Assembly: GCF_963676685.1 (NCBI RefSeq)
Contig: NC_092347.1
Coordinates: forward strand, 25,482,001-25,546,000
From: Mytilus edulis
Lineage: Eukaryota
Reading direction: 5' to 3'
DNA length: 64,000 nucleotides
Both the position numbers and the translations under genes were made by a program. The notes under the pieces were generated by a model. The model saw only the letters and a list, made by a program, of their open reading frames with translations, was not told where the DNA came from and ran no database searches. This document shows, in pieces, positions 5,788-61,267 of this stretch. Within the stretch, counting starts at the first letter, position 1, and each line of letters begins with the position of its first letter.

Positions 5788-5831
5788 GCGTCACTGATGA
5801 GTCTTTTGTAGACGAAACGCGCGTCTGGCGT
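5788..5831 (+). ncRNA. Minimal type I hammerhead ribozyme, intact core
   Basis: gcgtca-CTGATGA-gtc(ttttgta)gac-GAA-acgcgcgt-C-tggcgt. Stem I gcgtca/tggcgt, stem II gtc/gac, palindromic stem III ACGCGCGT, GUC triplet. Predicted cleavage after C5825. Confidence 0.93.
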
Positions 5832-6207
5832 ATATACAAAATTTAGTCCTGGTATCTATGATGAGTTTATTCCTAATTCCGCAAGGTTTCGCCAAAAAAA
5901 ATAAAAAGATTATGTTATCTTCTCCTGGGGTAGAAATTCTTAAGTTTTTCGAAAAAAAATCGGAGTTTTATAAATGGGCGTTTCTTTATTATAATTCAAG
6001 CAATATTTTTGAAATCTCATATGCCTGTACTCATATGGTAGTAAATAGGATGACAAGATCCTTGTTTTAAGTTTGGAAATTATACGATATAAAGTATACA
6101 TTTTGACAAGTATGAAAGAACTGTCTCAACTTTTAAATTGTATTCCCGTACTACTTTAACATCCCTAAAATATAATAGGAATGCCTATGCCCCTTGCTCA
6201 TATGCAT

Positions 6208-6304
6208 CTTTTGGATTCGAGCGTCACTGATGAGTCTTTTGTAGACGAAACGCGCATCTGGCGTATATACTAAATTTAGTCCTGGTATCTATGATAAGTT
6301 TATT
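6208..6304 (+). mobile_element. 5'-truncated retrozyme with hammerhead at 6221-6264 (stem III variant acgcgcat)
   Basis: ctttttggattcgagcgtcaCTGATGAgtcttttgtagacGAAAcgcgcatctggcgt...gataagtttatt. Confidence 0.88.
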
Positions 6305-9300
6305 GTAAAGGTTAGATATTTTGGAATTATGAAATTGATGAATAGGTCATTCAACAGACATTAGGATTTTTTTTTCAGTATATTTTTGTAGTCAGTTAGG
6401 TTCTTGAGAAATACAATTTGTGTCTTCATAAAACCTAATGATATATGCATAACGTACAAATACAGAAACTATAATTTTGAGATTTAAAACATTCAATTCA
6501 ACCTTTAGATTTTTGAAAACCCACACTGGAATCACTACACCATATTTTTTTTAAAATTAAGATATATCATAGTTCATGTTATCTACCCCTTTGCTAGTCC
6601 AAAAAACAAATTCTTATTTCCAAAATGAAAAACAAAATAATAACTATTTACGATCGCATAAAACACGAACAGAAAATAGGGTAATAGTATTCACGAATCG
6701 ACAGTGACTCTTAGATACATGTTTTCTTCTCACAAAAATATATCATTTAAAGGTCAAATTTGAGCTGTCAAACACAGGTATTAATTGCGAAACTTTTCCA
6801 CTTAATGTAATTTATAAACTTTTAGTCGTATGTCGATGTGCTCAGCGTGACATTTTGTTGAAATTGCTTTCGTCGCTTTAAAATATATAATCAACCAGAC
6901 TTAGCGCTCAAAAGCATATATAAGATACCAAGGAAAAGTCACTGAGATAACCCACGAAAATCTTCAATTATTTATCCTTAACTTATATCAACACAATCAA
7001 TTCAATTACCAAAAATGATTGAAAATTAAAGTCATCACAGTTTGAAAGCCGAATTGAGATCAATCTTAAAATTCAATATTACCTGAATTACAGGTTTTCG
7101 ATTTTCTTACCCCTATATATAAAGAAGCAATTTCGACTTTTTCTTACATCCAACATATTAGCGATTAGAATATAAATTTTAATGTACATTTTGACAAAAA
7201 AGTCAATCAGTGAGACTTAATTTGAGTGAGAAAATGCAATTTTGACACCTCAGAGCCTTTATGGAGGTATGTAATTATACAGTGTATTGTAATTTATTTT
7301 CTTCGTGTGACTTATGACTACGACAACTAGTTGTTGAAATTTAACAACTTAAAAAGTGTATAGAAACTTTGTAAAATAAATGATCCCAGGGTTACGTTGC
7401 TGTGCTCCATTTAAGTAGCAACTGATCAAGATAAACAAATACATCATATAGTATCATCATTCAGATTATGAATATATTTTATAACGGTCGTAAAAGCATA
7501 CATGGAACTATATAAACCATTACGAATTGACGACAAAAGACTTTAAATGTGCAACAAAAGTTTTAAGTAAATAATTGATACCTATCTTCTAACTTCAGAA
7601 GAGGTAACACAAATACTTATTGTTTCCTGATTGACAAAAAAGTATTTCATTACATACTTGAATTGGGTTTGCTGGATCTTTAAAAGACACTTTTTAGAAG
7701 TTATTTCAAACAAGAACCCAATAGATCATTATTATATAAGTAATACTGTGTCTTTTATTTACGTATGGATAATGATGCATCATGTTTTTACTACTTTTTT
7801 ACCATATGTTGTAGAACTCTGATGAGAAGATAACGTAAACTTATTTCAACATAACAAGAAATCAGTCAAGATGGAAAGGTAGGCTTATTTAATATAGAGT
7901 TTGTGTCTTACTGTAGAAAAATGGTTATATATGATGAAACAGTTGATGTTACTGATAATAAATTAATAAGTAAATGAATGAAAAAAGTAAATGGGCATTC
8001 TTAATAATTATAACATAGGTTTCTTGTGATAAGCAAATTACGAATAAAAAGATTTTTCAGAAAGGATTACTAGTAATGATTTTTCTATTTTTCACGTTTT
8101 ATCTGATTTGTTGAATTATTGCATAACATTCTTCAATAAATAGGCAGAAAACACCAGGCGGACAATAACAAAATCTTACCTCAAGGATGACTAGGTTATT
8201 CAACCACCAAAGACAAAAACGACGAGAAGAAAAACAATCTAAAATAGACTACAAATTATTTATTAGGAGCGAACCAACTTAATTTTAAATACGTATGGGA
8301 TAAAAAAAATTAATAAACATTTCGTGTATTTGTAATAAAAGTAAAATTTCAAAATATCAAAACTCCGAGGAAATCCGAAAACGTTTGCCTTCCTCTTTCT
8401 CTTGGAAACACATTATACGCGAGCAATCAATTCACAGTGAGCTTTCAGTGTTTTTATATGATACACAGATGCTGATAGTGTTAATTGTTGCATGAGTTTT
8501 TCTACTGAAGGAACTTATAAAATTGGGACTAGTTTGAGTTTTGTGTAATATTGATTTACTGTATTCGGGTTGGCATGTAATTATTTGATTTACTTGGGAC
8601 ACCTGCCTGGGTTTATTGTTTATTTTCAATTTCTGTTCAAATGTGTGATAGTTGTTTCTAGCTTATTTTTTTTAAATGTTAAGGTTAAAATAGTAAATAA
8701 GAATATGTCAAACATGAATGGTTGTCTGTTGTTTTATGAAACCAATTTTAAATTGTAAAGCTTTATTGTGCTGATTTCATGTTATACATAGACGGTATTC
8801 GCATTGTACTCATTCACTTTAAAACGAAGAAAGCAAATACAGTATCTATTAGTTTTAAATCTTCAAGCGTTTGATGTACAATAATGGACCTTTCTCACAT
8901 GTTAATGTAATTTTTGATAACTGCCATTCGTACAATAAGTAATACAGACAGCCTTTCAGTTCTCTCTGGTTTTTGTTAGTTTTTTATAAACCCATTCATA
9001 TTGTATAGAAACTCTAAATATTCTGTATATACATATAAATCAATGCCGTTGCTTCTACCAAATTAGGCTAAAATTAGTTTTATGCTTATTGTCTACAAAT
9101 TGAAATAAAAAAAAAGCTCACAGGGTCTCGTTTTTTTACAACAATTCTTTTCAGTAAGGAAACTAGTTCCTGTCGACAATTGTGCAGATAAACAACCAGT
9201 ATATATCGCGATGATTTTAAATAAAATGATGCAATAAGATGAAATTGGCATTATTTAAGAGATCAAAACATATTTTGATCAAACCTTTCAACAATCCATT

Positions 9301-9589: not shown

Positions 9590-9790
9590 CCACAAGCACA
9601 GATTGAACGTGCCGCATTTGGCTACAAGTTATCGAAATTTTCAGGTTTAAATGATCGTCAACTCCGTTTTTTGTTGAAACTTCCAACTACATTTTGTATT
9701 TTGATTCGAGCACCATTGATGAGTCTTGTATAGCCAAAACTGAAACGCGCGTCTGGTGTACCAAATTATAAGCATGTGTCTTTTGTAAGT
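9590..9790 (+). mobile_element. Old degenerate retrozyme copy
   Basis: ttcgagcacca-ttgatgagtc...gaaacgcgcgtc-tggtgt. Stem I variant gcacca/tggtgt; core mutated. Confidence 0.7.
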
Positions 9791-12479
9791 TTCAAAAGCC
9801 GCTTTCTACGTCAGTAAAATATCATGTAGCTCCGTTTCAATTCGCGGAAGGCAGGTGGAATGCAAGGAGCGAAATATAAAACTTATGCAGTTATATAAAT
9901 AGGAATTTACCAATATTAAAACCCCGGAGATCATTTCTTGAATATAAATATCAAATAACAGGAACAGAGGGAATTTCATAAACGCCAAATGAGTAAGAAC
10001 CATCGGTATGCCATCTTTTGCTATGCATGCATCACCAACCATGCAAATCAATACCCCTTCAAAATTTAAGACAGGGAAAATAAAAGTCCTGACACAATCA
10101 ATTGAAAATTGACTGCTTAAGCGATGATAGACTATAGACGCAATGATATACTATGGTCATTTGTCAGGTAAACCCACTAAATCAAACCTTTCGGCAAACA
10201 GTTCGCTGCTCGCAATGGAATCAACTAAAACCCGTTGCTGATACTGATTATTCGCAAGAATGCATTGAAGAATTACGATAGTAAAATGTAAAATAACAAA
10301 AATACCAAACTCCTGAGAAAAATTCAAAACTGAAAGTCCTTTATCGAATGATAAAATTAAAAGCTAGAACACATTAAACGAATAGAAAACAACTGTATTA
10401 TTCCTCACTGGGTACAGGCATTGCATTATGTACAAGATTAAATATTTAATCTAGTTTTATAGCTAACTAAATCGTATGACGGTTGTATAAAATTTCATCA
10501 TATTGGAAATGATTGGGGACTTAAATTTATATTTTCATCAAACATTAGTTTCGTTTTTTTTTTTAATTTGTCTTTGAATATTTGAAACAATTATTTGGTT
10601 TTTATTTAAATCTTACGAATTTAGTATTTAGATGGTAAGGATATAGAAAGAAAATCTGTATATTTCAGCACATTTTAAAATGTCTTTAATGAATTCAATT
10701 TAGATTTAAAGGCTTTATTGTGGGGACTTCAATAGCCATACTTTATTTTTGTAAGACTTATGTTATTTTATTATTTTCACATCTTTAAAGCATTTGTAGA
10801 CAGTATTGAAGGTATTTACAAATTTAAACTATTTTTATTAACTGTCATTCATACAATGAACAGCATGTACAAATATCTTTCATTCGTTGACAGTTAGTTA
10901 TACAGTAGATTGATAATAAACAAATGTAAATATTAGTTATAATATATCCAAGTAAACATAATATTGTATATATACTGTTATGAAACGAATTTGAAATTAT
11001 CTTTTAATTTATATAGAAAAAAAGGAAAACAAGACCAAAGTATCAAAAACAAATTTTTGGGATTTTAAAATTATTTTAACATTTCCTTTAATAGAAATTT
11101 AATGTATACCGTGGTAATGTAAGTAAAAGCAAAGCATTATTGTAATTTAATTTGGCATATGCGAATGATAGTATATAAGAGGCAAAATCTCCAACAAAGC
11201 AATTAAACACATCCAATGCAATTTAATTAAAAATTTCTAAAATTATTTTGAAACAAAGTGGTAAGAAATGGAAATTGAAAAGCTAAATATCAGAGTTAGA
11301 TTATCCTTAATAAGGGACAAAGAACACTTTCCGACATATATGATCCGAGAGGATAAGCATATAATTTTAAATAAATGTTAAATCTTTTCAAATTAAACTT
11401 AAAAGTTTCGGCTATTCACAAGTTCTTAATTTATAATTTGTTAATTGTTCATCATTGAATATAAAACGCAAATCTTCTTGCGTTGTTATGGCACATATCA
11501 TTTCGCAATCTTAACTGAAATATACTTTTTCGACTTTTAGGAGATTAGTACCGATTAACAGTTTACGTATAAGTATTGTAAGATATCAGATGCAAGTAAC
11601 AATAGGAAGCTTTTTGGGAAGTGGGCAGCGAACGAGATCATAAAGGCATCATTATGTATTATACAGCTAACATTGTCGATAAAAAACAAATCTGATAATA
11701 GATTTATCTGATTATATTCATGTAATTTTCATCACATGATAACTATTTTCCTTTACTGAACCAGCAAACCCGAAAGCAATTGAAAGGTAAGGATCAAACT
11801 TGAAAACGTCAGGTCAAACATTATGACGTCGGTGATGACTCCGGGTTAAGTATATTTGTCGTCACATTATCTTAATTTCGAAACTTTATGAAGAACGAAG
11901 CAGATTTGTCCAGGTACAAGGAAGATAATTATATTATTTAACTTTTCTTTCGTATAGAAATTTGAGTGTATAATATCGATAATCGTGGGAATTTAATTTT
12001 GTTTTGTGATGACATCAAATATGTAATTTGACTTGATCTTTCAATATCTTACGAAGAGTTATTCGCATGGCTGATCATATGCACAAATTATATAAAAATA
12101 AAAAAACACTTTTCTAAATGATATGTAATTCGATATCAGTTGGTGGGACTTCTTTTAATTGGAATACAGATTTAGATTCAGCCTAAAGTTTGTAACTATT
12201 AAAATCAAAGCCCATTACATACCTTCATATTGAACTTACGTCGGTAATACAGTTTTTGACAAATTGCTTGCTTTATGCCATTTTTCTTGAGTTTTGATTA
12301 ATAAAATAATATACAAAGTATGTTTCTGACAAATTCTGATCAATTCACTTAGTTTTATGACACAACTGCATTGCAGTAAAAATCATGTGCCCATCAGATT
12401 ACCGACAATGTCAAAAAGCCGCCGATAATTAAACAAGTAAAATATCACACTGGATATGATATCATTTAGTTTAAATATA

Positions 12480-15829: not shown

Positions 15830-16667
15830 AGTATATATTCATATGTAAACTTTAATGTCAAGGGTAATTCGTTGTTGTGTATGGAGATGCAGTATGCCGA
15901 ACTGTGCAGTATGTTTAGCAAAATATTTTTTGTTATCCTTTTTAACAATCATTGCATATCAATCTTCAAGTTTAAATATTTTAAATTCTTTTAGACCGAA
16001 CACTTAAATACTTTAATGGATAAATGCTTGAATTGATGATTAACATAGAAACATTCACCCCCTCCTCAATAATTAAAGGGAAATAAAAAAAAACAAATTA
16101 ATTACCCTAGATCTTCAAAATTTTTCTATGAAAACCTGATGAAGTCGTTTCTTACAAGTGTTGCTTATACGAAACCGCCTCAACAGTATGTCTCAAACTG
16201 AAATGCAGTTGTCTATAGCCATGTTTAAATTTTTGTTGTGTTTTATATAATTTAATACAAAAGACATATTTCCTGATTGTTTTAATGTATAATGAAGTGA
16301 CAGAATCGAGTCTTGCAAGTTAAATTATTTGAAAAATGTAAAAGAAATTAAAGAGAGCACGATAGCCTGCAAAAGAAGTATTTGAAATATAAATAATTCA
16401 ATAATTGCTTGAAATTTCATAATGCAGAAAAATATTTGTGGTTGCTACCGTATAATCTTTAACATTTATATTTAGGTCTTATGCTGCTAATTATTAATTT
16501 CTATACTATTTAAACTTCTGTAAACGTGTTACAATTTGAAAACGAAACGTGCATTTACGTCAACTAAATGTAATCATTAAATTATATATTCTTTGAGATC
16601 TAATCAATTGTGATAATCTTTGAAGTGTCAAGACTGTTCTAGATAACAAAAATACTTTGATCATACA

Positions 16668-16782
16668 TGTTCTTCAACTTCGTACATTATTTGGCCTTTT
16701 TAACTTTTTGGATTTGAGCGTCACTGATGAGTCTTTTGTAGACGAAACGCGCGTCTGGCGTAAATACAAAATGATGAGTTTA
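16668..16782 (+). mobile_element. Truncated retrozyme with an intact hammerhead at 16718-16761
   Basis: gcgtcaCTGATGAgtcttttgtagacGAAAcgcgcgtCtggcgt. Absent from unit B at about 29587. Confidence 0.9.
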
Positions 16783-16993
16783 CTGTGGATTCATAATTAT
16801 TCGTTGAATACCAATTTTCGTTGGTTTCGTGGGTACAAGTGAACCACGAATTCAAATGTTCAACGAATAACATATTTTCAATAGGCTTCGTATACAGAGA
16901 TTGGCAAAACCACGAAATTAAGTATCCACGAATATGCAAGTTTTTAGCAATCCACGAAAATAAATACCAACGATAATAAATGAATCCACAGTA
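16781..16993. mobile_element. MITE with terminal inverted repeats and flanking TA (Tc1/mariner-type)
   Basis: TActgtggattcat...atgaatccacagTA with internal ccacgaa repeats. Second copy at 26736-27061. Confidence 0.85.
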
Positions 16994-19591: not shown

Positions 19592-19927
19592 GATCAAAAA
19601 CAGTTATAAAACCAAACAGGTACAAAGTTGAAGAGCATTGAGGACCCAAAATTCCAAAAACTTGCCAAATACGGCTGATGTAATATATTCTTTGGATAAG
19701 AAAATCCTTAGTTTTTCGAAAAATTCAATGTTTTGTAAACAGGAAATTTATAAAAATGACCATATAATTGAAATTCATGTCAACACCGAAGTGCTGACTA
19801 CTGGGCTGGTGATACCCTCGGGGACGAAACGTCTACAAGCAGTGGCATCGACCCAGTGGTTGAAATAGTTATCAAAGGTACCATGATTATTATTTAATAC
19901 GCCAGACGCGCGTTTCGTCTACAAAAC
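19592..19927 (-). mobile_element. Retrozyme monomer on the minus strand, hammerhead truncated
   Basis: acgccagacgcgcgtttcgtctacaa is the reverse complement of the hammerhead 3' half. The body is the reverse complement of 59893-60165. Confidence 0.85.
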
Positions 19928-22402: not shown

Positions 22403-22750
22403 ATCATCAGCTCAGTAGTCAGTATTTCGGTACTGACATGATTTAACAAACTACTAAAAGTGTCCGTTTATAAATTTTGAAATTATTGAGAAAAAAAGGT
22501 TTCAACCCCCTGAGGCAAAGTTGGCTTGAGATGAATTTGGCTATTTATTTTAGGTATTTTGGACATATAGCTCTTCAACGGTTTCGGTACTTATACATCT
22601 TCGGATTTCAAATGCTTGGCTTTGAGCGTTCCTGATGAAGGTAAATCCAGAAAAGCGCTACGGACGCAAGAAATTAATAAACGATGAAGGTAAATCCAGA
22701 AAAGCGCTACGGACGCAAGAAATTAATAAACGTGTTGTTTTCAAAATTGT
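22403..22750 (+). mobile_element. Second retrozyme subfamily with hammerhead at 22626-22667 and a 49-bp tandem duplication
   Basis: gcgttc-CTGATGA-agg(taaat)cca-GAA-aagcgcta-C-ggacgc, stem I gcgttc/ggacgc. The body shares blocks with subfamily 1 (cagtagtcag, gacatga, gctcttcaac). 22634-22682 is repeated at 22683-22731. Empty site in unit A at about 11555. Confidence 0.8.
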
Positions 22751-27061: not shown

Positions 27062-30000
27062 TCTATTAATAAACATTTCCCATTTTCACAAATGTAATTC
27101 ACCGAATTAGACGTATTACCGGGTGTGTGCTATCGTGAACAACACGACGGGTTTCACATGTGGAGAAGAATCTGCTTACTCTCCGGAGCACCTGAGATAA
27201 CCACAGTTTTTTGTGGGGTTCCTGTTGCTTCATATTTCTTATTCTTTGTTGTGTTTTGTGCACTGTTGTTTGTCTTATTGTCTTTTTTTTAGCCATGGCG
27301 TAGTCAGTTTTTTTTCTACTAGTATATTTCGTCAATCTTTTTTTTAAATGTGTCTTAATTTATGGATCATCTTTTTTAGAGTTATAACCCAAGGCATAGA
27401 TGACTTTTATTGTATTTGGCAATTATTTTCGGAATTTTTGTTCTAAAATCATCCTTTCATCCTTTGAAGTTTTTATACTCCATACAACATACATTATCGC
27501 CCAGATGTTTTTATCATTTTAACTGTCGTTACACATTTTAACGGAGTGGGTTGTAGGCGTTCAGTGCATCTATATGGCAATAACTGAGAAGCCCTTTTGG
27601 ACCCTGGAATTCAAAAATTAAAAAGTATTATTAATCTGCCGTATAACATCCTTCAGATGATAACAAGACTTTAGTCTGTCGAACATCAATATATATGAAC
27701 AGTACTAATCTACAGTTTGGAGTTTATCTTTTATAATGGTATAAGAGCTTAAAATGTCTTTAAATAAGGATGGTGAAATTTGGACCATGCGCGAAATGGT
27801 TATTTTATGTCAAATTCGTATATTTCAACATATCTATTACACAAAAGTGACATCGCAAGAATTCTTGCTGCACTAAAATTTGAAATGAAAGCAACTGGGT
27901 TTGGATAACTTTACTATTTTTCAAAAAGTTCGAGGGCCAAATGTTGGCACACGGGAAACTTATGTTGAAAATTATAATTCTATGTTAACATGTTAAGCTG
28001 GAAAAGATTTTATATCATCAATTTAACACTACTGGGATTTAGAAAGGGTCTGTGAAAAAATGGTTGGCAGGAGTGGTTCAATCACTTTCATGACTCTATC
28101 TTGTAAGACATACATGTGGACAACTCTACTTTTTGTGCTCACATCAGCAAAGAGTCTGTTGAGACACTTACTATTATGAATTTTGTTATAAGAGACTAAC
28201 AACGATATTAGCTTTCTTTATAAGTTTCTGAATACTAGTATTAGCGTAGGATTGTGGAATAAAGAAATTATAGAACAGTTGGTACAATTGTATTCAAATC
28301 AGAATCATATGAAGACAGTCTGTTTATTTGGCTATAATCAATGCTATAGTCCAATGAACATTTTGATGATTGATATATATTACAATAACTTCTTGCGCTG
28401 AGATGATTGACAAGTAACAAAATTTGTGTAATTGGACAGAAAAGATTCGTTACTACCCACAAACAAAGTAAGCGATAGGGTCCTCTCACTGCCTTACGAA
28501 AATACCTTTTTTCATAGTTAATGACCTCTGTGTGACTTTTGGTGGTAATACTTTACCAGACAAACTTCAAATAGGATTATACTAGGTGTGTCGATAGTGT
28601 ATAATGCATCTCCCGTCATGCGATTCCAATGTAATCACTAGCAATAATATCAAGAGACAAGTGCACTGGTATACATCATAAAATATGATTTGAATAGTTT
28701 TAATAATGGAGGTGGTCGGAAATCCCAGGTTTTTTTATCCAAATCACAAGACGTGTTTTCAGGCTTTCATAAATATTAATTATATTTTGAAATTTCAAAG
28801 CATTATCCTTACATTTTTATTTATATTATATACATAGTATATATACACTTTATATCTAAACTTTATTGCGCGTCTTGCACGAATACATAATTTCAATCCT
28901 GGTATATATGATGAGTTTAATGACATTGTCATTTGTATTTTTTTTGTGTGAAGATGCAGTCTGAATAATTAAAGGAAAATAAAAACCCAAATAAAATAGA
29001 TGTTTTAATTAACTCTGAATGCCCCATGAAGTCGTTCCTTCCAAATATTTTTTTTTTTAAACAATGTGTGTTGATTGCCACAGTATATTATTATATGAAA
29101 CCTCCTCAACAGTATGTCTCATCCTGAAATGCAGTTCAAGCCAGTTGTCTATGTTTGAATTTGGTTGTGTTATATATCATTTAATACATAAGACATATTT
29201 CCCGATTGTTTTAATGTATAATAAAGTAAAAGAATCGAGTCTTGGAGTTAAATTATTTGAAAAATGTAAAAGAAATAAAAGTAACCATGATAGCATGCAA
29301 AAGCAGTATTTGAAATATAAATAAAATTCAATAATTGCTTTACATTTCATAATGCAAAAAAATATTTGTGGTTGCTAGCGCATAATCATTAACATTTAGG
29401 TCCAAGTCTTGTAATTACTAACCTCTATATTATTTAAACTTCTATAAACGTGTTACAATTTGAAAAAGAAACGTGCACTTACGTTAATTAAATGCAATCA
29501 TTAATATATTCTTGGAGATCTAATCAACTGGAATAATCTTTGATGTGTCAAGACTGTTAGATAATAAAAATACTTTGATCATACATTTTGTTAAGTTGAT
29601 ATCTCATTGGCGTATACCCTACATTTTTGTATATGAATTTAGATCTGAACCTAAGGCAGAAAAAAACATTTCAAATTTGATTGATTTTTTACTATTTCTG
29701 AAGAGAAGGTTCACAAAAAATGACTGCAGGGATAATATTTTAGTACTCCGAACCCGCATTTTGTCCACAACTATTTTAAGAATCATTTGTGACGCTTAAA
29801 TTAAAACAGTTGAAAGGTAAAGCCAATGACAAAGTATACCAGTTCATTCGTTTGCAAATTACATAACAGGTTAGTAACATAAAACGTTTGGTGGAAGTGT
29901 TTTAAAACCAACTGTCAACATCTTTATGGAAACCAATCGTATCAGTCTTATAGCCACTGTGTGCGTTTTTTTGTTTTTGTTCGAGGGTGTCTTAAACAAG

Positions 30001-31635: not shown

Positions 31636-33227
31636 TGAACGCCACTTTTAAGCGTCACTTTTGGGCTATGTCGTGGCGGCCAGTTTTTATCGCTGGAGGA
31701 AGACGGAGTAGAGTGCCCGGAGAAAACCACCAACTTTCTACACTATGAATGTTTACAAAATGAAAATGCTGACTGACTAATAGAATTTATTTAAATCCAA
31801 ACGTATGAACATTCGTCTAAACAGTTGAAATATTGGTCTAAACATGCCATTATAAATGATGTCCTTATGTTTTAGTCTCGGTTAATGTCTTCCTTTTGAC
31901 GATCCTACTTGCATTTCTCTTTATTCGTAGATAAAAAAAACTAAAACATAGAACAAATCTCGTATCTAGACGACATCGATTTACACGGAAATATCAAAAA
32001 GGTCGTTGTCATTTCGGGAGTTCAGTATCCATTTAATGCTTAAAAAGGGTCATCGATTTATCTTATCTTATCAATATGAATTTTGTTGTTATTACTAGAA
32101 ACAGTCAACTTTTTATACTTAAGCTGTTTTGGTAAATAGAAAATTTTACCACGAATCAATTGACACAATATGGTTTTATTTTTCCTATATCGTTCAACTA
32201 TTTTATATTTAACAGAAACATAAACAAAATTATTTTCATAAAGTGGACTTTGATATTTTTTATAACAGTTAAATACTTTATAAATGTTAGTGAAGTTAAC
32301 TTTGTAAGTATTGACATTACCCATTGATTTTAATCTTTCCAAAATCAACGACATAAAAAATCTTAATATCAACAATAGTTTGTTAAAAATTGGAAATTTG
32401 GCAAATGTTACAACTTCGCATGGGTGTAAATCCAGAAAAGCATTTTGAACCGGCACCAAATTTAGACATTTTTTTTTTACTTGCACTAGATAGATACCGC
32501 TGCTTAAGGACTGTATGTCTACGATGGTATTGTGACGGGATTGCTTCTATCTTCTGGCCCTCATTTTAAGTTGACCGTTTATGGATTTGAGACTTTAAGA
32601 CAACATTGGGCCAATACATTTGTGGGTGATCTAAGATCAATCAGTTTAAATCCACAAACATTTCTTTCTCAATTAAACAAAAGTTCCATAAGTATTAAAT
32701 CCATATTCACTTTATGATTAATATTTTGATAGCCATTTCGGCCAGGTTAACTTTAAGTGATTTGAACGAGGTTACCCCTATACGGTTACCATGAAAATTC
32801 TATCGGAGAAACAATGATTGACATCTTTATGATGTTTTTGTTTTTAGACGGAGATCAATATTCTCATTATGCTACCAAAAATCCATTTATATTTAATCTT
32901 TTCAATCTTTGTCTATATTATATCTTAATACCTGTCACTATAGAATTGTTGTTGTTTACAAGCTGAACTTTTCATTAAGATGAAAATAGTGTTTATCTCC
33001 ATTCTAATTCCTAGCAGAGTTTCGGTCTGGAAGAAAAGTACTACTAATTCGTCTATCATACATTATGCGGTGGTGTACTTTTACCGCTTCATGTTTGTTA
33101 TTGGATAACAGCATTGATATGGCGTAAAGAGAAAAAATGACCGACCATCATCATATTCTGTAGCTAGTTTAAAGCCGTATGTAACAAGTTACTGGTAATT
33201 GTACTGTCCTCGGTGAACGGTTTTATT

Positions 33228-33695
33228 CTTTTGTAGACGGAACGCGAGTCTGACGCAAAAACAAAATTTCAATCCTGGATCCTGGTATCTATGATGAGTA
33301 TATTTACAACCTCTGGGTCGATGCCACTGCTGGTGGAGTTTTTATCCCCCCCCCCCCCCCCCCCCCGAGGTTATCACAAGTGCAGTAGTCAGCACTTCTG
33401 TGTTGACATGAATTATCATGATTAGTGATAATTATGAATTAACTGTTTTCAAAATAAATTTATTTTTGAAATTCTAATAAAAGCTTTTCTTCCTCAGAAA
33501 TAGATTACATTAACTGTACTAGTCAAGGCTTTTATGAATTTTTGGTGCTCAATGCTCTCCAACTTCTTATTTTATTGGCCCTTTTTAACTTTCTTTTTTT
33601 TTAATTCGAGCGTCAATGATGAGTCTTTTGTAGACGAAACATGCGTCTTGTGTAAATAAAAAAATCAATACTGGTATTCATGATGAGTACATTTA
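33228..33695 (+). mobile_element. Retrozyme, ~1.2 monomers, two decayed hammerheads, internal C21 run; unit-B-specific
   Basis: ttttgtagacggaacgcgagtctgacgc (33229) and gagcgtcaatgatgagtcttttgtagacgaaacatgcgtc (about 33608). Units A and C lack it. Confidence 0.85.
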
Positions 33696-34409
33696 TGACA
33701 TTTATAACCGTGATCCATAGTGTATGATCGACAACAATTTAGTCATTTAGTGATTGATGATCGAAAGCTTTGACTATTAAAACTTTCGGGTATAGATGCC
33801 GAAGTTAACTTTTTCATTCGTTGTTATTTTTCGTTTGCGATCGCCGAATATCTAACTTTAGATGTGTGTTTTTAAATACCGTTGCTCACGGAAAAGATAT
33901 CGGCGAAGTACGGGATGACAATATTTCAATAGCTGTACATTTCCCGAAGATTTTCATAAAATAAAGGTTTATCGTTAATAGAAAGTATAATTATGCAAAA
34001 AGTAAAATCACAAAAATACTGAACTTAGAGGAAGATCAATTGGGAAAGTCCATAATCACATGGCAAAATCAAATAACAAAACGCATCAAAAACGAATGGA
34101 CAAAAACTGTCATATTCCTGACTTGGTACAGGCATTTTCAAATGTAGAAAATGGTGGATTAAACCTGGTTCTATAGCGCTAACCCTCTCACTTTAACATA
34201 TCTTGTGACGAAAATTTTCCATTGAGTTATATAAAGCATATCCATTTTACTGTTAGATTAGAAGGATCGTATGACCACGATGACATGTTCATTCGTTTGC
34301 AAATTTTATGAATGCATATTTGGAGCAAATTAAAACTTGTGTATTTTAAAAGTACATGATAAAATGTTTTGCTTTTATTTATTTGTAATGTTTAAGAGTT
34401 TAGATGCAA

Positions 34410-50226: not shown

Positions 50227-50776
50227 ATATTCCAGCAGCACCTGCATACAGGGTATATATCTCCCAATTGATACGCTATTCCCGTGCTTGCGTTTCCTAT
50301 CATGATTTTCTTGATAGAGGGTTACTGCTCACAAGGAAGCTATTAAACCAAGAGTTCCAAATGGTGAAGTTGAAATCATCCCTTCGTAAATTTTACGGAC
50401 GCCATCACGAGTTGGTTGACCGTTATGGAATAACCGTTTCACAAATGATATCAGATATGTTCCTTACGTCGTAACTACAATCCCCTTCCCTTTCATGAAT
50501 GTGACCTACCGAATTAAGACTATTTACCGACTTTGTAATCACATAAGCAACACGACAAGTGCCACATGTGGAGCAGGATCTGCTTAACCTTCCGGAGCAC
50601 CTGAGATCACCCCTAGTTTTTGATGGGGTTCGTGTTGTTTATTCTTTAGTTTTCTATGTTGTGTCATGTGTACTATTGTTTTTCTGTTTGTCTTTTTCAT
50701 TTTTAGCCATGGCGTTGTCAGTTTGTTTTAGATTTATGAGTTTGACTGTCCCTTTGGTATCTTTCGTCCCTCTTTT
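50227..50776 (+). mobile_element. 5'-truncated Penelope-like element: RT thumb/C-terminus plus 3'UTR
   Basis: IPAAPAYRVYISQLIRYSRACVSYHDFLDRGLLLTRKLLNQEFQMVKLKSSLRKFYGRHHELVDRYGITVSQMISDMFLTS* (stop at 50474). Confidence 0.85.
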
Positions 50777-53700
50777 ATAACTTCATAAAATGCGATTGAA
50801 CACAACAGTTTTCTTGCCATAAATAATCAAGGGACTAAAAGTGGACCAGTAAATCCCGGGGACAAGACTTCAACCGGAGTGTTCATGTTGCTCACAAAAG
50901 ATACAGAAGATACATAGTTACGTCGAAAAAGATTGGCGAAGACATGGCAAAAACAAACAAAAAACATCAATAAAAAAAGCAAGTTCCCACAAAAATACAC
51001 AGAAAACTCAATAGTAGTTGAAATTATCCGTACCCAAAACTGGGGGTGATATCAGGTGCTCTGGTAGGATAAGCATATCCTTCTACACTAGTGACTTCCG
51101 TTAATTTATAGTTTATAGTTAAGTATTTAGTGGACTATAATCATTGGTTAGATAAATGCGTCAGTAGTATACCACTCTTCAGAAAAAGTCATTAATCGAT
51201 TGAGTGAAAACAAATTTTAGTTACAAACTAGAAACGATTGAAACGTATCAACTATAAGAGGGATACAACGGAACAAAAGAAACACTGAACTGCAACAAAA
51301 ACGGACGCCAATATACATAGAAACAGACTATTTGATAACAAATACCATATTCCTGTCTTGTCTGTCTTGGTACAGGAAATTTTAAGAAAAAATGGTCGAT
51401 CGAACCTGTGTTTACGGCTTTTCATATTTGCATCTTTTTTCTTTTGTTCATTGTGTTGGCCGACTTTTTTCAACTTTTAGTTTTTAGTTACGTCACTTCT
51501 ATTCTCTCTTTTTATGAAAGATTGAAAAGCATCATACTTTAGATATTGTTGAAAGTGTTTCACTTTTATTCATTTCTCCCGCTTTTTATTTGATCAAATT
51601 TCAATAATGCACCGTCTCTGTTTCAATTGTAAACAAAGAAACCATAACATCAAGTTTTCATCTTTTACCAAACCACGATGCCACACATAATATACTAGTT
51701 TTAAAGGCTATTGACATTTTTTATTTACTTTTAAAACTTTTTAACTTAGCTATTTGGATCATAGAACAAAAGCAAATATTTCCTAACTGAACAGCAAAAT
51801 ATGTACTGATAGAACCCATTGTGCATAAATAAAATAAAATAATGTTACTAATATAGGTAGACATAATTGCCTATGTTGAAACATACTGTTGGTGCGAACG
51901 TGACAAAATAATCGCACGTCTAAAATATCCACAGAAATGATATGCTGCTCATAGTCATTATCCGTATTAATATTTTCATATATTATTCGTCTGTATTGAG
52001 TTGTCAGAGTGTGGTTGTTAAATATTGTATAAGTAATAGTATATCTATATAGGGATCACCAAAATGAAGCAAATTAAGAGAAATTAAAGTTAATTTTAAT
52101 GATTAACAAATGAAATTACATAGAAAATTGACACTATCAGTATGACCATCTTTGACCTCGCTTAAGATACCAACAGGTTCAATGGTAATTCTACACACTA
52201 CTTTAACTTCTTAACCATATCTTGTTAAGGATTGTTATTTCATTAATGCAACAAATGAATAACTCACTGGATTTAAGAAAAAACATCATCGATATCTACC
52301 CATATCATCAATTACATACACAGGTTCGTATCAATTAGTAAAGAAATCTGACGTTTACACCTAGATCGTACATAGCACTTTTGTAAGGCAATAACTGTGA
52401 TGAACTAATACGGATAAGCACATATCTTACACGGGAAGGCAATAGAAATCCATAAGAACAGACACCAAAATATATATTTTGCAATCAATTCTGTTCTTTG
52501 GCAGTTCAGAAGTTTAAATGAGTAATGCATTTCTAAATACTTTATAAGATGAAGTGTATTGTAATAAGTTACAGTAGATTTCTAAAAACACAATGAGTTT
52601 GTCAAAATACAAAATTAAAGTGTCGTCGTTTGAATGATAAATTCAAATATTTTCTGCTGAATTGTATTTCTCATCAGAAGTACATGGTAACCAGTAATCT
52701 TATTATTTAAAAAAAAATAAAAATAAAGATAAAACACAAATCTTCAACCCATGTTACAGGCTTATATAAACCAACTCAGTTTCTATATTAGGAAACAAAT
52801 CAGCAGTCAAAGCTTATCAGATCTAAATATACCATAGAACCATGGAAACATAACAAATATAGCTGAGAGAATATACAAAAACCAAAGAAAGATCAGATAA
52901 TGTTGTCCTTCGAATTAAAATAAATCCCTCTAAATTAGTAAACATTGATCCATTGATAAAACGAATCCTTAAAATGACTGTCTCATTCCAATGAAGATTA
53001 TGGATATTTTGGAGTTAGATATTTCACAACGCTTCATTTAATTTTAAATCAAGTCTACTTTGTCCATAAACAATGATAAAATTAAATAACCTTCAAAAAA
53101 GGGTGTAGCCGTCCCTATTTTAACATATCCATTCATAAAAATGTATTCATCAATGTCAATATTGTATGAAAGTTTCAAATGATTGGAATTTGGTGTTTTG
53201 TTCATTGCTCAAATAATTTGTCTGTGTCCCTTTTACGCTTCCGTATGTTACATGGTCATGAGACGAGACAATTATTAAAAGATATTTTTTAATGAATGTT
53301 TGACCTTTAATCGATGTTAAAAACCTTTTGGTTTCAACATCCAAAACACCATACATGACGTTTTCCCTGATTTCACAGTTAGAGTTCTGAGTCAAAGAAT
53401 GTAGTTTAATACTTATCATGTATGTAATTCAAACTGTTAAAACGTCTCCCTTTATATTAAAAAAACACTACAAACCATCGATTTAAAAACTGTTAAATTT
53501 AAGATATTTTTAGCCTTGACGTTTTTAACAGACACATTTTACAATTAAAATAAAAAAAAGATTATAGTCTTCAATGTTTATACTTTTTGTAATTAAAACC
53601 ATTTGAGATATTTTGCCTAATAAGTTTATTTTAAAATTAGTAATCAGTAATCAGTATAAGTCAAATAATTATAAGTATGACAGGTTTTCGTCTTGTGTTT

Positions 53701-57481: not shown

Positions 57482-58700
57482 TGCATAACTGGAAAACGAA
57501 GATCAAAACATCTTTCTTTAGGTAATGTAAAATCTAAATGTATAAAGAACTGCACTGAATCCAAAAACACGTACACTGAGGAAGATATCATCAATATGCT
57601 GGATTTGTTTTTACTGGCAACATGTTTATCCAGCCGGTATTCCAATAAAATTGAGAATGGAAATGGGGAATGTGTCAAAGAGACAACAACCCGACCAAAT
57701 AAAAAACAACAGCAGAGGGTCACCAACAGGTCTTCAATGTAGCGAGAAATTCCCGCACCCGGAGGCGTCATTCAGCTGGCCCCTAAACAAATATATACTA
57801 GTCCAGTGATAATGAACGCCATACTAATTTCCAAGTTGTACACAAGAAACTAAAATTAAAATAATACAAGACTAACAAAGGCCAGAGGCTCCTGACTTGG
57901 GACAGGCGCAAAAATGCGGCGGGGTTAAACATGTTTGTGAGATCTCAGCCCTCCCCCTATACCTCTAACCAATGTAGAAAAGTAAACGCATAACAATACG
58001 CACATTAAAATTCAGTTCAAGAGAAGTCCGAGTCTGATGTCAGAAGATGTAACCAAAGAAAATAAACAAAATGACAATAATACATAAATAACAACAGACT
58101 ACTAGCAGTTAACTGACATGCCAGCTCCAGACTTCAATTAAACTGACTGAAAGATTATGATTTCATCATATGAACATCAGGCACAATCCTTCCCGTTAGG
58201 GGTTTAGTATCATACCATCATAACATATATGAGAAGAACATAACCCGTGTCATGCCAACAACTGTTTTTAAAATAAATGTGTTTAGTTCCGATGCAAAGA
58301 CCTTATCAGTGACTCAATATTAACGCCAAAATATGCAATCTTTAATGACTTGACAACAGTATCGTAATTATATCCCTTCTTAATAAGTCTATTCAAAGGT
58401 TTTGTAAGTTTCTGAGGTGAATACTGACACCTTTGTGCTTTATAAAGAATGTATACAAGTTCTGCACTAATACTGGTCAATTTCTTTTTTTTTTAAATAT
58501 ATGAAGCAAAATTCAATAAAAAAAAATGTAAAGAAACATACTGCAAAGTTGTTCAATTTATCATTCAGATATAGTGATGTCTTGTAACTCAATTGGCCAC
58601 ATTTAAGTGGGTGTTTGCATCTCATATTTTCCATCATTATATCTAGATTTTATTTCGACATTGACACAGATAGACACCAGTACCTATGACACACTCGATA
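57482..58700 (+). mobile_element. Old PLE RT-core fragment (+) interrupted by a younger antisense PLE insertion
   Basis: Left part reads GKRRSKHLSLG...KNTYTEEDIINMLDL. Removing the insert restores ggtattccaATGtataca = GIPMYTSSALIL (cf. GIPMGTNCAPLL), followed by AKLFNLSFRYS. Confidence 0.7.
57647..58447 (-). mobile_element. Young 5'-truncated PLE-family insertion (ORF C-terminus plus 3'UTR)
   Basis: Minus-strand ORF end ILYKAQRCQYSPQKLTKPLNRLIKKGYNYDTVVKSLKIAYFGVNIESLIRSLHRN*; AAT on both sides (57644-57646, 58448-58450). Confidence 0.78.
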
Positions 58701-59892
58701 GTTTCATGCGATTTCTCGAGTATTTGTTTGTTAACATGAATTGCCTTCGATGAATGAGAGAGAATGCTGCTGCCTAATTTTATTATAGCAAATACCAATA
58801 ATAAAACATCTGTATTATATTCCTGTCAGCACTGTAGTACTGAACTGTCATGCTTTTGATACATTCGTGCGCTAACAGTGCCCCCAACTGCAATTCATCG
58901 ACCGGGATGAGGAGGGGGAGGAAGGCAGACATAAATGGCGATCGATTCCTTGTTTTCAAAGACTTTCTAAGTTTTATCACTGCAAATCGAGCGTAGACTA
59001 AACACTCGTCTGGCATGTACAATTTAATCCTAGTATCTATGATGAGTTTATTTACAATAGTAACGAAGTACTAAGCAACCGTGCTAGTGATACCTCCTGG
59101 CTAACAGTATACCAACAGATTGATCCACCAAGAGTGTAGCAATAGAATGGAGAAACGTCTTCGTTTAATAACAGCAAATTTCAACAAAATGTATACCCGT
59201 ATTTAGAATAACTAGGATTGAAATGTTAAATTTTTAATTCGCTTAATTTTCTATGATGCATGCAGTTAAGATCACTTTTTTAATAATGTAATCCATTGTT
59301 ATTAGAGAATGTTCCAAACAAATATTAGATTCCACGAATGGAGTTCAACCTGGATACTTACTGTCTTTATCGATCGATCATGCAGCATTTACATTAAATT
59401 AAGTAATGGTTGAAAAGATAAGTTGACTATTACAAATACAGCTTTTCAAAGTTGTATGTGTTCGTATATGCAAGAGTCAAATCTTTTTTCAGTCCCAAAA
59501 GTGTGTCATTTCCTCAAATCAATGCCCTTTTCGTGAAGTTATGAAATTCATATAGGTGATACTTTTAACATGTGGCGTCAATTTTCTAAATATCTGCCCT
59601 TTGATTTCACCTCAAGTCTTTTTGACCATTTAGTCATCTAAAGCCGAATTTGATTATTCGATGAAGATTCAAAAGGTATAGGAAGAGTATCAAATCTCTT
59701 TAAAAAAATTTAGTGCAGTGTTTTGTAGGTTTGTGTTTTACCATCATTGTTTTTTTTTTCTTCAAAAGATATGTTTGTTTTGTCTTTTTGGTGTCTCACG
59801 TTTTTTTATTACTTCGTTTACCATACAAAGACCTACTTATATTTTTATAATGTCTTATAGTTTTATACGCTTTGACAGGGCGACTTATGTCT

Positions 59893-60244
59893 CACCACTG
59901 GGTCGATGCCACTGCTGGTGGACGTTTCGTCCCCGAGGGTATCACCAGCCCAGTAGTCAGCACTGCAGTGTTGACATGAATATTAATTATATGGTAATTT
60001 TTATAAATTTCCTGTTACAAAACTTTGAATTTTTCGAAAACCTAAGGATTTTCTTATTCCAGGAATAGATTACCTTAGCCGTATTTGGCACAACGTTTTA
60101 GAATTTTGGGGTCCTCATTGCTCTTTAATTTTGTACTGGTTTGGCTTTATAACTATTTTGATCTGAGCGTCACTGATGAGTCTTATGTAGACGAAACGCG
60201 CGTCTGTCTTATTAAATTATAGTCCTGGTACCTTTGATAACTAT
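59893..60244 (+). mobile_element. Retrozyme monomer with hammerhead at 60167-60210 (core intact, stem I weakened)
   Basis: gcgtcaCTGATGAgtcttatgtagacGAAAcgcgcgtCtgtctt; body collinear with 5510-5871. Confidence 0.88.
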
Positions 60245-61267
60245 CTAACCATTAACCATTATAAATAATATAATAGCCCAATGACTCAGTTGGTCAAAAC
60301 ATGACCAAGTAAAACAGTTAGAACTGTTGGTGAAAAGAACTTCGAATTTGAATAGAAAGAACATAGATGTGTGTTTTCTATGACGCATATTGAAGTGTTT
60401 CGATTTTACTTACGTGAATCTACTTTTATCTAAAGTATATATTTTTTGAATCCATGTTTTTGGAGATGAATTTTATAATGTGAATGGCTGTTATTATTGA
60501 TTACCTTATTGACAGTTTGCTTTGTCTGTGTTGTTTCTAATTGATCTTTTGCAATTCGATATAATAATTTACTTTATGCATTGCGTATTTAATGCATGTT
60601 TAATTACATAGCTACATGAACTTAACTCAAGTATGTAGTCAGTATGCCAGTGTGTTGAAACTATCTATCTATCAGCGGATCAAGTACTTGTATCCTTTGA
60701 AATGCATTGTACTTTCTTTTGTATTGTATTGTATTCTTTTACTAGTAACAGTGGCTTTTTGTTGTCTGTAATGTCGATATTATTGACAAAAATTTACGTC
60801 ATGGTTTTTATTTGTCATTTGATTTTTCCCTTTGATTAGGGACTTTCCGATTGAATTTTCCTCGGAGTTCAGTATTTTTGTGATTTGACTTTTTTCATGT
60901 TTAAAGGTTCAAATAAATGTTTATTGTGCATAAAAAATGAAAGGAAAGGTAGAACAACTAATACACCACATATAAATAATAGGTATCGAGTTATAAAATA
61001 GTTATCAAAGGTACCAGACTTATAATAAAAGATATGCATATGTTCCACAATTATAGACGTTTACACCTCGAGTCAAGCTATAGTAACTCGTCACGATTCT
61101 AGACAAGACGTATGCGATATGTTACAAACCTGCTCGTGCATTTTTCATTGTTATTCAACACAAAATAATTATCTAAGATACCTGGGACGATCTCATTTCA
61201 CAAAGGATTTCTTTTGTCTACTTATTGTACCTCGAACTTATTTACCCGGTGTAGGTCTTTAATTATA

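What the first reader, a model, noticed from the sequence alone, without database searches (positions are those of the whole stretch)
5826..61025. Independent retrozyme insertions share a fixed 3' end ~40-46 nt downstream of the ribozyme cut, with variable 5' ends
Seen: copies end at about the same motif (gatgagtttatt or gataactat) at 5871, 6304, 16782, 28919, 33695, about 59055 and 60244, and a ~30-nt minus-strand stub at 60996-61025 consists only of this terminal piece. The 5' ends vary (5353, 6208, 16668, 33228, 59893), and two copies exceed one monomer. Inference: reverse transcription is target-primed from a defined internal site rather than from the ribozyme-generated end. It reads through the cleavage junction and can pass one full unit, as expected for a circular or multimeric template. 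This would map a cis-acting RT initiation signal on the RNA circle. The copy at 19592-19927 does not fit the pattern.
Basis: partly seen in the sequence, partly recalled or inferred. Interest (0 to 1): 0.8.

Follow-up and report, generated by a model that had tools for sequence, protein, structure and literature searches.

The report
Mussel retrozyme copies end at one site
Copies of a small ribozyme-carrying mussel retroelement all end at one fixed point, just before an RNA hairpin shared with Naiad-type Penelope-like retrotransposons, so copying starts at an internal site, as already shown for such elements.

Summary
The repeat is the known mussel hammerhead "retrozyme": a 363-nt unit cut by the ribozyme at window 5825|5826.

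- **3' ends.** In the window and in 180 kb of random genome sequence, 25 of 26 copies end at ...GATGAGTTTATT(TA) or, in an older subfamily, ...GATAACTAT. That is 40-48 nt past the cut.
- **5' ends and size.** 5' ends vary. Arrays reach 1.3-5 units, and stubs of 26-29 nt exist.
- **Template.** Some 3' ends run 3-11 nt into the next unit, so the template continued past the end.

It is, however, a published property of Penelope-like elements (Frangieh et al. 2024, PMC11167929).

What I add:
- The 59 nt starting 8 nt after the end (window 5516-5574) form a covarying three-helix hairpin.
- Three Naiad-type (N-terminal GIY-YIG) Penelope-like families of this genome carry the same hairpin. Their own copies end at the homologous point.
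- Naiad family C matches the retrozyme at 87% over 61 nt across the junction. No hammerhead was found in the non-coding Naiad stretches sampled.
- 5' ends are modestly enriched in and near the ribozyme.

Circle versus linear multimer remains open. The scan reached the Naiad-hairpin reading before on other DNA (s1-838831, s1-836129). This is a new member of a known kind.

The parts
5354..5871 (+). Young retrozyme insertion of 1.43 units (unit positions 209-363, then 1-363). The internal unit junction is at 5508|5509.
5788..5831 (+). Type I hammerhead ribozyme with a minimal, palindromic helix III. The predicted cut is at 5825|5826 (unit 317|318).
   Evidence: RF00163, 32.5 bits (gathering score 34), E 3.4e-4. 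The same motif occurs at 16718-16761 and 60167-60210.
5425..5468 (+). Upstream hammerhead of the same insertion. Its core carries a private change, CUGAUGA to CUCAUGA, at 5433.
   Evidence: only a weak Hammerhead_3 match. In one search most reads show G at 5433.
5826..5871 (+). 46-nt tail between the ribozyme cut and the element's 3' end. The motif CCTGGTATCTATGATGAGTTTATT is conserved. Reverse transcription is inferred to start at its last bases (unit 363 to +2).
   Evidence: loose ends at 5509/5510.
5516..5574 (+). Leader hairpin of three helices (P1 pairs 5516-5522 with 5568-5574). It begins 8 nt after the 3' end and is shared with Naiad families A, B and C. It is the likely recognition element for the reverse transcriptase.
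   Evidence: 92.5% of cells paired, 10 of 23 pairs compensatory, 0 of 500 shuffles reach this.
5576..5596 (+). Second leader hairpin, GUCAGC...GCUGAC. The subfamily at 22414-22440 shows a compensatory change (GUCAGU...ACUGAC).
6209..6304 (+). 5'-truncated young copy (unit 268-363) with the canonical 3' end.
9699..9790 (+). Old, degenerate copy running from unit position 269 into an old-type tail.
16656..16784 (+). 5'-truncated copy (from unit 218) with a 17-nt deletion in the tail. It ends ...GATGAGTTTACT.
19593..19926 (-). The exception. This old copy runs from unit 296 through the junction to 275, so its 3' end is not at the canonical site.
   Evidence: Unexplained.
28868..28921 (+). Short copy (unit 311-363) with the canonical end.
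33227..33695 (+). Old copy of 1.3 units (unit 294-363, then 1-363).
58993..59058 (+). Short copy starting at unit 300. Its end runs 6 nt into the next unit (...TTTATTTACAAT).
59896..60244 (+). Nearly full old-subfamily unit (7-363) ending ...CCTGGTACCTTTGATAACTAT, 40 nt past the cut.
60998..61026 (-). Stub of about 29 nt that consists only of the old-type terminal piece.
61165..61230 (-). Old copy of about 66 nt, from inside the ribozyme to a tail ending ...GATAATTAT.
50447..50781 (+). 5'-truncated Naiad family C copy. It holds 335 nt of the 3' UTR and ends exactly at the family's 3' end (...CTCTTTTATT), which is homologous to the retrozyme end.
   Evidence: (95.8% to L055 1-334)
33997..34186 (-). 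Terminal 190 nt of a Naiad family A copy. At least 10 such fragments in the window end within the same 10-nt span.

Best explanation
The repeat is the known mussel non-LTR retrozyme, a protein-less 363-nt element with a minimal type I hammerhead. It behaves as a non-autonomous Penelope-like element that uses the machinery of Naiad-type elements, which have an N-terminal GIY-YIG endonuclease followed by a reverse transcriptase.

Proposed mechanism:
1. The template RNA holds at least one tail-to-leader junction. It is therefore either a read-through multimer or a circularised monomer.
2. The Naiad protein binds the 59-nt three-helix leader hairpin (unit positions 8-66).
3. It nicks AT/TA-rich DNA and starts cDNA synthesis 6-8 nt 5' of the hairpin base, on ...UUUAUU(UA).
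4. Every new copy therefore ends there, 46-48 nt 3' of the ribozyme cut, and lacks the hairpin on its 3' side.
5. Synthesis runs back through the ribozyme junction and often aborts, giving variable 5' ends and stubs of 26-48 nt. It can also pass one or more whole units, giving partial tandems.

Shown here:
- the fixed end and its small spread;
- multi-unit copies in phase with that end;
- the covarying hairpin;
- its homology with the Naiad leader and tail;
- the Naiad 3' ends at the homologous point.

Inferred: protein binding, target priming, and which Naiad family acts.
For: - **Fixed 3' end.** 25 of 26 copies in the unbiased sample end at the site. In run X8, the only listed class of diverse-flank loose ends lies at window 5510; none was listed for X3.
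- **Spread of the end.** Ends range from 362 to +11. T occurs at +1 in 20 of 29 copies and A at +2 in 17 of 29.
- **Copy sizes.** Arrays of 1.1-5 units are all in phase with the end. A 26-27-nt stub has an empty-site comparison in the neighbouring repeat unit of L054.
- **Insertion footprints.** Target-site duplications occur in 5 of 29 young copies against 1.0 expected, and no shuffle out of 500 reaches 5. There is no poly(A).
- **Leader hairpin.** 92.5% of cells are paired and 10 of 23 pairs are compensatory. No shuffle out of 500 reaches this, and slid controls pair at 40-52%.
- **Naiad family A (L053).**
  - It has an N-terminal GIY-YIG domain in a 1053-aa frame.
  - At least 14 solo 3' ends stop at L053rc 552-555 (two more run on to 560 and 562). 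At least 14 full copies continue from there into the leader.
  - Terminal fragments in the window end in the same narrow span.
- **Naiad family C.** The junction matches the retrozyme at 86.9% over 61 nt (E 2e-17), and the similarity continues into the tail. The last unit of a family C tandem ends exactly at ...CTCTTTTATT.
- **Relatives.** A related 1006-aa protein has GIY-YIG at 152-237 and RVT_1 at 647-854.
- **Literature.**
  - Internal initiation with a required RNA element 3' of the start, and AT-rich targets, in a Poseidon element (PMC11167929).
  - 5' truncation, partial tandems and a (TA)n bias in Naiads (PMC8557442).
  - Mytilus retrozymes of 350-390 bp made as circular RNA (PMC7229834).
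Against: - There is no biochemical evidence here. Binding of the hairpin and the start site are read from DNA footprints.
- Only one locus each of Naiad families B and C, and two stretches of family A, could be read.
- The covariation rests on 7 sequences, 4 of them retrozymes.
- The tail similarity with family C is partial (GGTATCTWT...TTTATT).
- RNA-seq showed no discrete RNA ends at the cut or at the junction.
- One copy (19593-19926) has a different 3' end.
- TA at +1/+2 could come from the target rather than the template. The exact start base is therefore uncertain by 2 nt.
Confidence: 0.75

Rival explanations
1. The fixed end is a true RNA 3' end. The RNA would be terminated or cut at the unit boundary (363|1), and copying would then start at the very end of the template, as in ordinary LINE/SINE target-primed reverse transcription. 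No internal initiation would be needed.
For: A fixed 3' end with 5' truncation is what end-primed copying gives. A few arrays start close to unit position 1 (L005; L059).
Against: - Copies of 1.3-5 units need templates that cross 363|1 uncut.
- Ends reach 3-11 nt into the next unit.
- Naiad full copies carry the tail directly joined to the leader.
- The apparent excess of exact single units dissolved once junctions were read. L058, L060 and L061 each have short tail pieces upstream.
- No RNA ends were seen at the boundary.
- In vitro, a Penelope-like element starts internally (PMC11167929).
Confidence: 0.1
2. The helper is not a Naiad. It would be one of the hammerhead-bearing, C-terminal-endonuclease Penelope-like families (Poseidon or Neptune type), from whose terminal repeat the retrozyme derives, as proposed for vertebrate retrozymes.
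For: The retrozyme has a hammerhead, and the Naiad parts sampled have none. Published work derives vertebrate retrozymes from terminal repeats of hammerhead-bearing elements (preprint 10.64898/2026.07.22.740005). Many C-terminal-endonuclease copies exist in this genome.
Against: - Four such families (L049-L052) show no similarity to the retrozyme and no Rfam hammerhead.
- The leader and tail match Naiad family C at E 2e-17.
- The hairpin covaries across three Naiad families.
- Only 4 of the C-terminal families were read, so a hammerhead donor may still exist.
Confidence: 0.1
3. The arrays and dispersed copies arose at the DNA level, by satellite-like unequal crossing-over and segmental duplication, and not by retrotransposition.
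For: Tandem organisation is present. Some loci are duplicated with their flanks (L011 = L012; C10:41568475 and C10:41613280).
Against: - Hundreds of different flanks join at one and the same end.
- 5' ends are graded and stubs of 26-29 nt exist.
- There is one filled-versus-empty site comparison.
- Target-site duplications exceed chance.
Confidence: 0.03

Closest known systems
Metazoan non-LTR retrozymes (Cervera & de la Pena 2020, PMC7229834), including the Mytilus galloprovincialis family of 350-390 bp
   Same: It has a type I hammerhead with a minimal helix III, a 363-nt unit and tandem or partial-tandem copies. It has no LTR, PBS or PPT, is AT-rich and is expressed as RNA. This is most likely that very family.
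   Different: That paper proposed a primed circular RNA template but, in the passages I read, gave neither the start site nor a helper. Here the 3' end is placed 46-48 nt past the cut, directly before a hairpin shared with Naiads.
Poseidon element PAc of Anolis: internal initiation of reverse transcription (Frangieh et al. 2024, PMC11167929)
   Same: - The start site is internal to a multi-copy RNA and lies downstream of the hammerhead cut (about 85-92 nt there, 46-48 nt here).
- It sits at an AC-rich structured region.
- RNA 3' of the start is needed (about 55 nt there; a 59-nt hairpin here).
- Targets are AT-rich, and ribozyme cleavage is not required.
   Different: - PAc is autonomous, has a C-terminal endonuclease, and its start lies inside its ORF.
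- Here the element is non-coding, and the shared signal belongs to N-terminal-endonuclease Naiads.
- No second start site 30-40 nt away was seen.
- The evidence here is footprints only, not biochemistry.
Naiad Penelope-like elements (Craig et al. 2021, PMC8557442)
   Same: The ORF has an N-terminal GIY-YIG followed by a reverse transcriptase and is about 1000 aa. Copies show heavy 5' truncation, partial tandems, no canonical hammerhead, a TA-rich target bias and very high copy number in bivalves.
   Different: In the passages I searched, that paper did not describe a conserved leader hairpin at the 3'-end/5'-start junction. It also did not link hammerhead retrozymes to Naiads; it suggested only that hammerheads may parasitise Penelope-like elements.
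Stringent SINE/LINE partnerships and R2, where the reverse transcriptase recognises a structured 3' RNA element
   Same: A non-autonomous element copies the helper's recognition RNA. The 3' end is fixed, 5' truncation is common, and there is no need for poly(A).
   Different: Here the recognised hairpin lies 3' of the start site and is not copied into a single-unit insertion. Only tandem or circular forms can therefore serve as templates.

Membership tests
Metazoan non-LTR retrozyme | Type I hammerhead ribozyme in each unit | tested here: met
   RF00163 at 32.5 bits (E 3.4e-4), just under the gathering score of 34. The core CUGAUGA...GAAA...GUC is intact at 5788-5831, 16718-16761 and 60167-60210. 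Self-cleavage itself was not tested.
Metazoan non-LTR retrozyme | Short non-coding unit (170-400 nt; 350-390 in Mytilus) in head-to-tail copies, without LTR, PBS or PPT | tested here: met
   The unit is 363 nt and arrays hold 1.1-5 units. No ORF of 130 aa or more overlaps a copy.
Metazoan non-LTR retrozyme | Accumulates as circular RNA | not testable with these tools
   RNA reads cover the unit and cross the unit junction. Genomic tandems give the same reads, and no discrete RNA ends were reported.
Non-autonomous Penelope-like element | Fixed 3' end, frequent 5' truncation, partial tandem insertions | tested here: met
Non-autonomous Penelope-like element | Shares terminal sequence with an autonomous Penelope-like family of the same genome | tested here: met
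   The Naiad family C junction matches the retrozyme at 86.9% over 61 nt (E 2e-17), plus part of the tail. Families A and B share the covarying hairpin.
Non-autonomous Penelope-like element | No poly(A); variable or absent target-site duplications; AT-rich targets | tested here: met
   Flanks are not A-rich. Duplications of 7-9 bp occur in 5 of 29 copies against 1.0 expected. TA is enriched right after the end.
Naiad clade (for the proposed helper) | Single ORF with an N-terminal GIY-YIG endonuclease followed by a reverse transcriptase | tested here: met
   L053 has GIY-YIG at residues 138-230 of the N-terminal 251 aa of a 1053-aa open frame. The relative P0128 has GIY-YIG at 152-237 and RVT_1 at 647-854.
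Naiad clade (for the proposed helper) | No canonical hammerhead | tested here: met
   There is no hammerhead match at E up to 10 in the sampled non-coding parts L053-L057. For family B only 361 nt around the junction were read.
Internal initiation of reverse transcription as in PAc | cDNA starts at a defined site inside the RNA, with required RNA 3' of the start | tested here: inconclusive
   Footprints fit this: ends lie at 362 to +11, junction-spanning multimers exist, and a conserved hairpin sits 8 nt downstream. The requirement for the hairpin needs an in vitro assay.
Internal initiation of reverse transcription as in PAc | [quoted passage not shown] | tested here: inconclusive
   The TA enrichment at +1/+2 may be template sequence or 2-nt microhomology.

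The most novel reading that the evidence does not exclude
A ribozyme-bearing parasite has copied only the two cis-signals of hammerhead-less Naiad elements, the 3' tail and the leader hairpin.

- The start site lies 46 nt from the 5' end of the ribozyme-released linear monomer, so that monomer can yield only stubs of 48 nt or less.
- Circularisation, or escape from cleavage, would therefore be required for propagation.
- This would give the hammerhead-plus-ligation cycle a concrete role: it would recreate the tail-to-leader junction without any genomic tandem.
- The enrichment of 5' ends in and near the ribozyme would then be the in vivo footprint of templates cut during copying.
Probability: 0.3. 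Interest if true: 0.65.

Novelty: new member of a known kind. Interest (0 to 1): 0.4.

Why it matters
Retrozymes are abundant in animal genomes and transcriptomes, yet how they are copied back into DNA has been a matter of models.

Here the DNA footprints place the start of copying to within a few bases. A covarying hairpin shared with an abundant autonomous family sits next to it.

This gives a directly testable helper-parasite pair: Naiad protein with retrozyme RNA in linear, dimeric and circular form. It would extend the 2024 in vitro finding of internal initiation from one lizard Poseidon element to the Naiad clade and to retrozymes.

It also suggests that some animal retrozymes did not arise from the terminal repeats of hammerhead-bearing elements.

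The general mechanism itself is already published, so the gain is one of detail and of a new test system.

Tried and rejected
1. **Rfam at gathering thresholds** gave nothing. The hammerhead appears only with E-value thresholds.
2. **Four C-terminal-endonuclease Penelope-like families (L049-L052) as helpers.** They show no similarity to the retrozyme and no hammerhead. A 16-nt match in L049 was not pursued.
3. **An apparent excess of exact single units.** Several arrays seemed to have 5' ends at unit position 1, which would have argued for one round on a circle. Reading four junctions rejected this. L058, L060 and L061 carry short tail pieces upstream that the search table had not listed.
4. 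**5' ends at 322-323 in L028 and L047.** These are false, because another transposon sits at GTATATA with a 3-bp overlap. Apparent 3' ends at 323-345 in old copies are BLAST artefacts of a diverged tail.
5. **Mapping of stubs with blastn-short.** It was not robust for old copies.
6. **Read laying.** It gave only the best-supported loose ends, so no full genome-wide histogram of ends was obtained.
7. **Solo 3' ends of Naiad family C by genome search.** The top 40 hits were saturated by junction-bearing copies. This was solved instead by reading the end of a tandem and by the window copy at 50447-50781.

Full report
**What is there.**
The window is AT-rich (about 31% GC). It lies on contig 4 of a 1.37-Gb genome. 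I take this genome for a Mytilus-type mussel, on the basis of its size, its 14 or more large contigs and the retrozyme literature.

A 363-nt unit (window 5509-5871) carries a type I hammerhead at 5788-5831. It scores 32.5 bits in RF00163, against a gathering score of 34, with E 3.4e-4. At gathering thresholds nothing is found.

Helix III is a loop-less palindrome (ACGC|GCGU). This is the minimal form described for Penelope-like elements and animal retrozymes. The predicted cut is at 5825|5826, which is unit 317|318.

Size, ribozyme type and host match the Mytilus galloprovincialis retrozyme of 350-390 bp, which is reported to accumulate as circular RNA (PMC7229834).

**Check of the observation.**
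- Copies end at 5871, 6304, 16784, about 28919, 33695 and 59052 with ...GATGAGTTTATT.
- A copy ends at 60244 with the older variant ...GATAACTAT.
- A minus-strand stub of about 29 nt lies at 60998-61026, and a further old copy ends at 61165.
- 5' ends fall at unit positions 209, 268, 218, 311, 294, 300 and 7.
- Two copies exceed one unit.
- The copy at 19593-19926 (minus strand) runs from 296 to 275 and remains an unexplained exception.

**Beyond the window.**
The 30 best genomic loci and 18 random 10-kb stretches give the same picture.
- All 16 scorable random copies end at the canonical site. This holds once old-type tails are recognised and two copies split by another transposon are rejoined (L028, L047).
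- With the window, 25 of 26 copies end within a 14-nt span (P about 1e-34).
- Flanks differ from copy to copy.
- In DNA contigs of two public runs, the only listed loose-end class with diverse continuations is in run X8, at window 5510, with 161 contigs and an agreement of 0.39.
- Target-site duplications of 7-9 bp occur in 5 of 29 young copies against 1.0 expected. No shuffle out of 500 reaches 5.
- There is no poly(A).
- A 26-27-nt stub in L054 sits in one unit of a local tandem repeat whose neighbouring unit is the empty site.

These are independent retrotransposition events.

**Fine structure of the 3' end.**
Among 29 young copies the end is at 362 (2 copies), 363 (5), +1 (4), +2 (11), +3 (3), +4 (2), +8 (1) and +11 (1). 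T is enriched at +1 and A at +2.

The commonest end is therefore ...TTTATTTA, 48 nt past the cut. The longer extensions reproduce the start of the next unit, as in L024 (TACAATCA). The template therefore continued past the start site.

This, together with in-phase arrays of 1.1 to 5 units, supports internal initiation on a multimeric or circular RNA. It argues against priming at the ribozyme-made end (317), where no copy ends.

**What lies next to the start.**
The first 90 nt or so of the unit are the best-conserved part among old and young subfamilies. An alignment of four retrozyme junctions with three Naiad junctions gives a three-helix hairpin at unit 8-66 (window 5516-5574).
- 92.5% of cells are paired and 10 of 23 pairs show compensatory changes.
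- No shuffle out of 500 reaches this.
- Slid controls pair at 40-52%.
- As an example, P1 is ACUGGGU/GCCCAGU in the retrozyme and Naiad family C, ACCGGAC/GUCCGGU in family B, and ACCAAGU/ACUUGGU in family A.

A second hairpin (5576-5596) shows a compensatory change in the subfamily at 22414-22440.

**The helper.**
Four C-terminal-endonuclease Penelope-like families (L049-L052) share nothing with the retrozyme. The evidence points to Naiad-type elements instead.

- **Naiad family A.**
  - A 1053-aa frame with an N-terminal GIY-YIG domain (L053) has a leader homologous to unit positions 1-56 directly before its ATG.
  - Relatives of about 1000 aa have GIY-YIG at the N-terminus, and one has RVT_1 behind it. 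This is the Naiad architecture.
  - A genome search with L053rc 1-700 showed at least 14 full copies that run from a partial upstream tail straight into the leader.
  - The same search showed at least 14 solo 3' ends stopping at 552-555, with two more running on to 560 and 562. One of these solo ends is this element's own 3' end.
  - Terminal fragments in the window end in the same narrow span.
- **Naiad family C.**
  - It has 1000-aa ORFs and a 3370-nt unit, and its copies are 97-100% identical.
  - Its junction matches the retrozyme at 86.9% over 61 nt (E 2e-17).
  - The similarity continues 5' into the tail...GGTATCTTTCGTCCCTCTTTTATT against ...GGTATCTATGATGAGTTTATT.
  - The last unit of a family C tandem ends exactly at ...CTCTTTTATT.
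  - A solo copy in the window does the same (50447-50781).

No hammerhead was found in the non-coding Naiad stretches I sampled. This agrees with PMC8557442.

The retrozyme thus carries Naiad-like tail and leader signals around a body of its own and a hammerhead.

**5' ends.**
They are variable but not uniform.
- Among about 42 arrays with at least one full unit, 6 start at 317-323 (P about 1.5e-4).
- In the unbiased sample, 8 of 29 start at 287-311, inside the ribozyme (P about 6e-4).
- The position windows were chosen after seeing the data, so this is suggestive only.

Either some templates had a ribozyme-cut 5' end, or the enzyme stalls on the ribozyme fold.

An apparent spike of exact single units was rejected after reading four junctions.

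**RNA.**
Two 2026 RNA-seq runs cover the unit with both read orientations and cross the unit junction. They also run from the 3' end into diverse flanks, which indicates read-through transcripts. No discrete RNA ends were reported. This cannot separate circles from multimers.

**Comparison with what is known.**
- Frangieh et al. 2024 (PMC11167929) showed in vitro that a Poseidon element starts reverse transcription at defined internal sites of a multi-copy RNA. Those sites lie downstream of the hammerhead cut, in an AC-rich stem-loop.
- In that work, RNA 3' of the start was required, targets were AT-rich, and ribozyme cleavage was not needed.
- Fixed 3' ends, 5' truncation and partial tandems are standard for Penelope-like elements (PMC8557442).
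- Retrozymes as non-autonomous Penelope-like elements have been proposed (PMC7229834; preprint 10.64898/2026.07.22.740005).

In the papers I could search, I found none of the following:
- the placement of the start for a retrozyme;
- the covarying leader hairpin;
- the link of a hammerhead retrozyme to hammerhead-less Naiads.

Earlier agents of this scan reached the Naiad-hairpin reading on other DNA (s1-838831, s1-836129). I tested it independently here.

**Limits.**
- Read laying listed only the top loose ends.

**Verdict.**
This is a new member of a known kind, of moderate interest.

Noticed in passing
L028:1055-1459 and L047:517-1131: Two independent insertions of other transposons sit at the same GTATATA site of the retrozyme tail (unit 322-325), each with a 3-bp overlap. 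The one in L028 has inverted termini of about 25 nt. This looks like a target hotspot for a DNA transposon with 3-bp duplications.
   Followed up: partly
window 5433: The upstream hammerhead of the 5354-5871 copy reads CUCAUGA instead of CUGAUGA. Most DNA contigs and RNA reads show G or A at this position, so this copy's first ribozyme is probably dead.
   Followed up: partly
window 22403-22750: A second repeat family shares only the end of the leader (the second hairpin, with a compensatory GUCAGU/ACUGAC change) with the 363-nt retrozyme.
   Followed up: no
window 58167-58231 (-): A SECIS_1 match scores 32.3 bits, against a gathering score of 35, with E 0.017. Some Naiad families are reported to encode selenocysteine with a SECIS element (PMC8557442). 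It did not overlap the Naiad pieces I had.
   Followed up: no
L054 (reverse complement) 340-860; G000:C5:1350450-1351350: The 3' UTR of Naiad family A holds an internal tandem repeat of about 265 nt, present in many copies. Its second unit carries a 26-27-nt stub of the old-type retrozyme/Naiad tail, and the first unit is the empty site.
   Followed up: partly
window 4266-4820, 10279-10463, 13395-13454, 19242-19435, 23763-23873, 33997-34186, 35844-36017, 48777-48951, 60811-60894: The window holds at least 10 terminal fragments of Naiad family A-like elements, each up to about 190 nt. All stop within the same 10-nt span at the family's 3' end. Naiad tails are as common here as retrozyme copies.
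   Followed up: partly
window 5254-5971 (RNA runs X21, X24): RNA reads lie in both orientations at similar depth. In X21 the minus-first-mate depth is up to about 3 times higher in parts of 5542-5757. The strandedness of the libraries is unknown, so antisense retrozyme RNA is possible but not shown.
   Followed up: no
L053 (reverse complement) 362-395: The upstream partial tail copy of this Naiad A element begins at AGGGTTAGCGCTATAGAACCAGGTTTAATCCACC. To my eye this loosely resembles tRNA A-box and B-box motifs. I ran no tRNA search.
   Followed up: no
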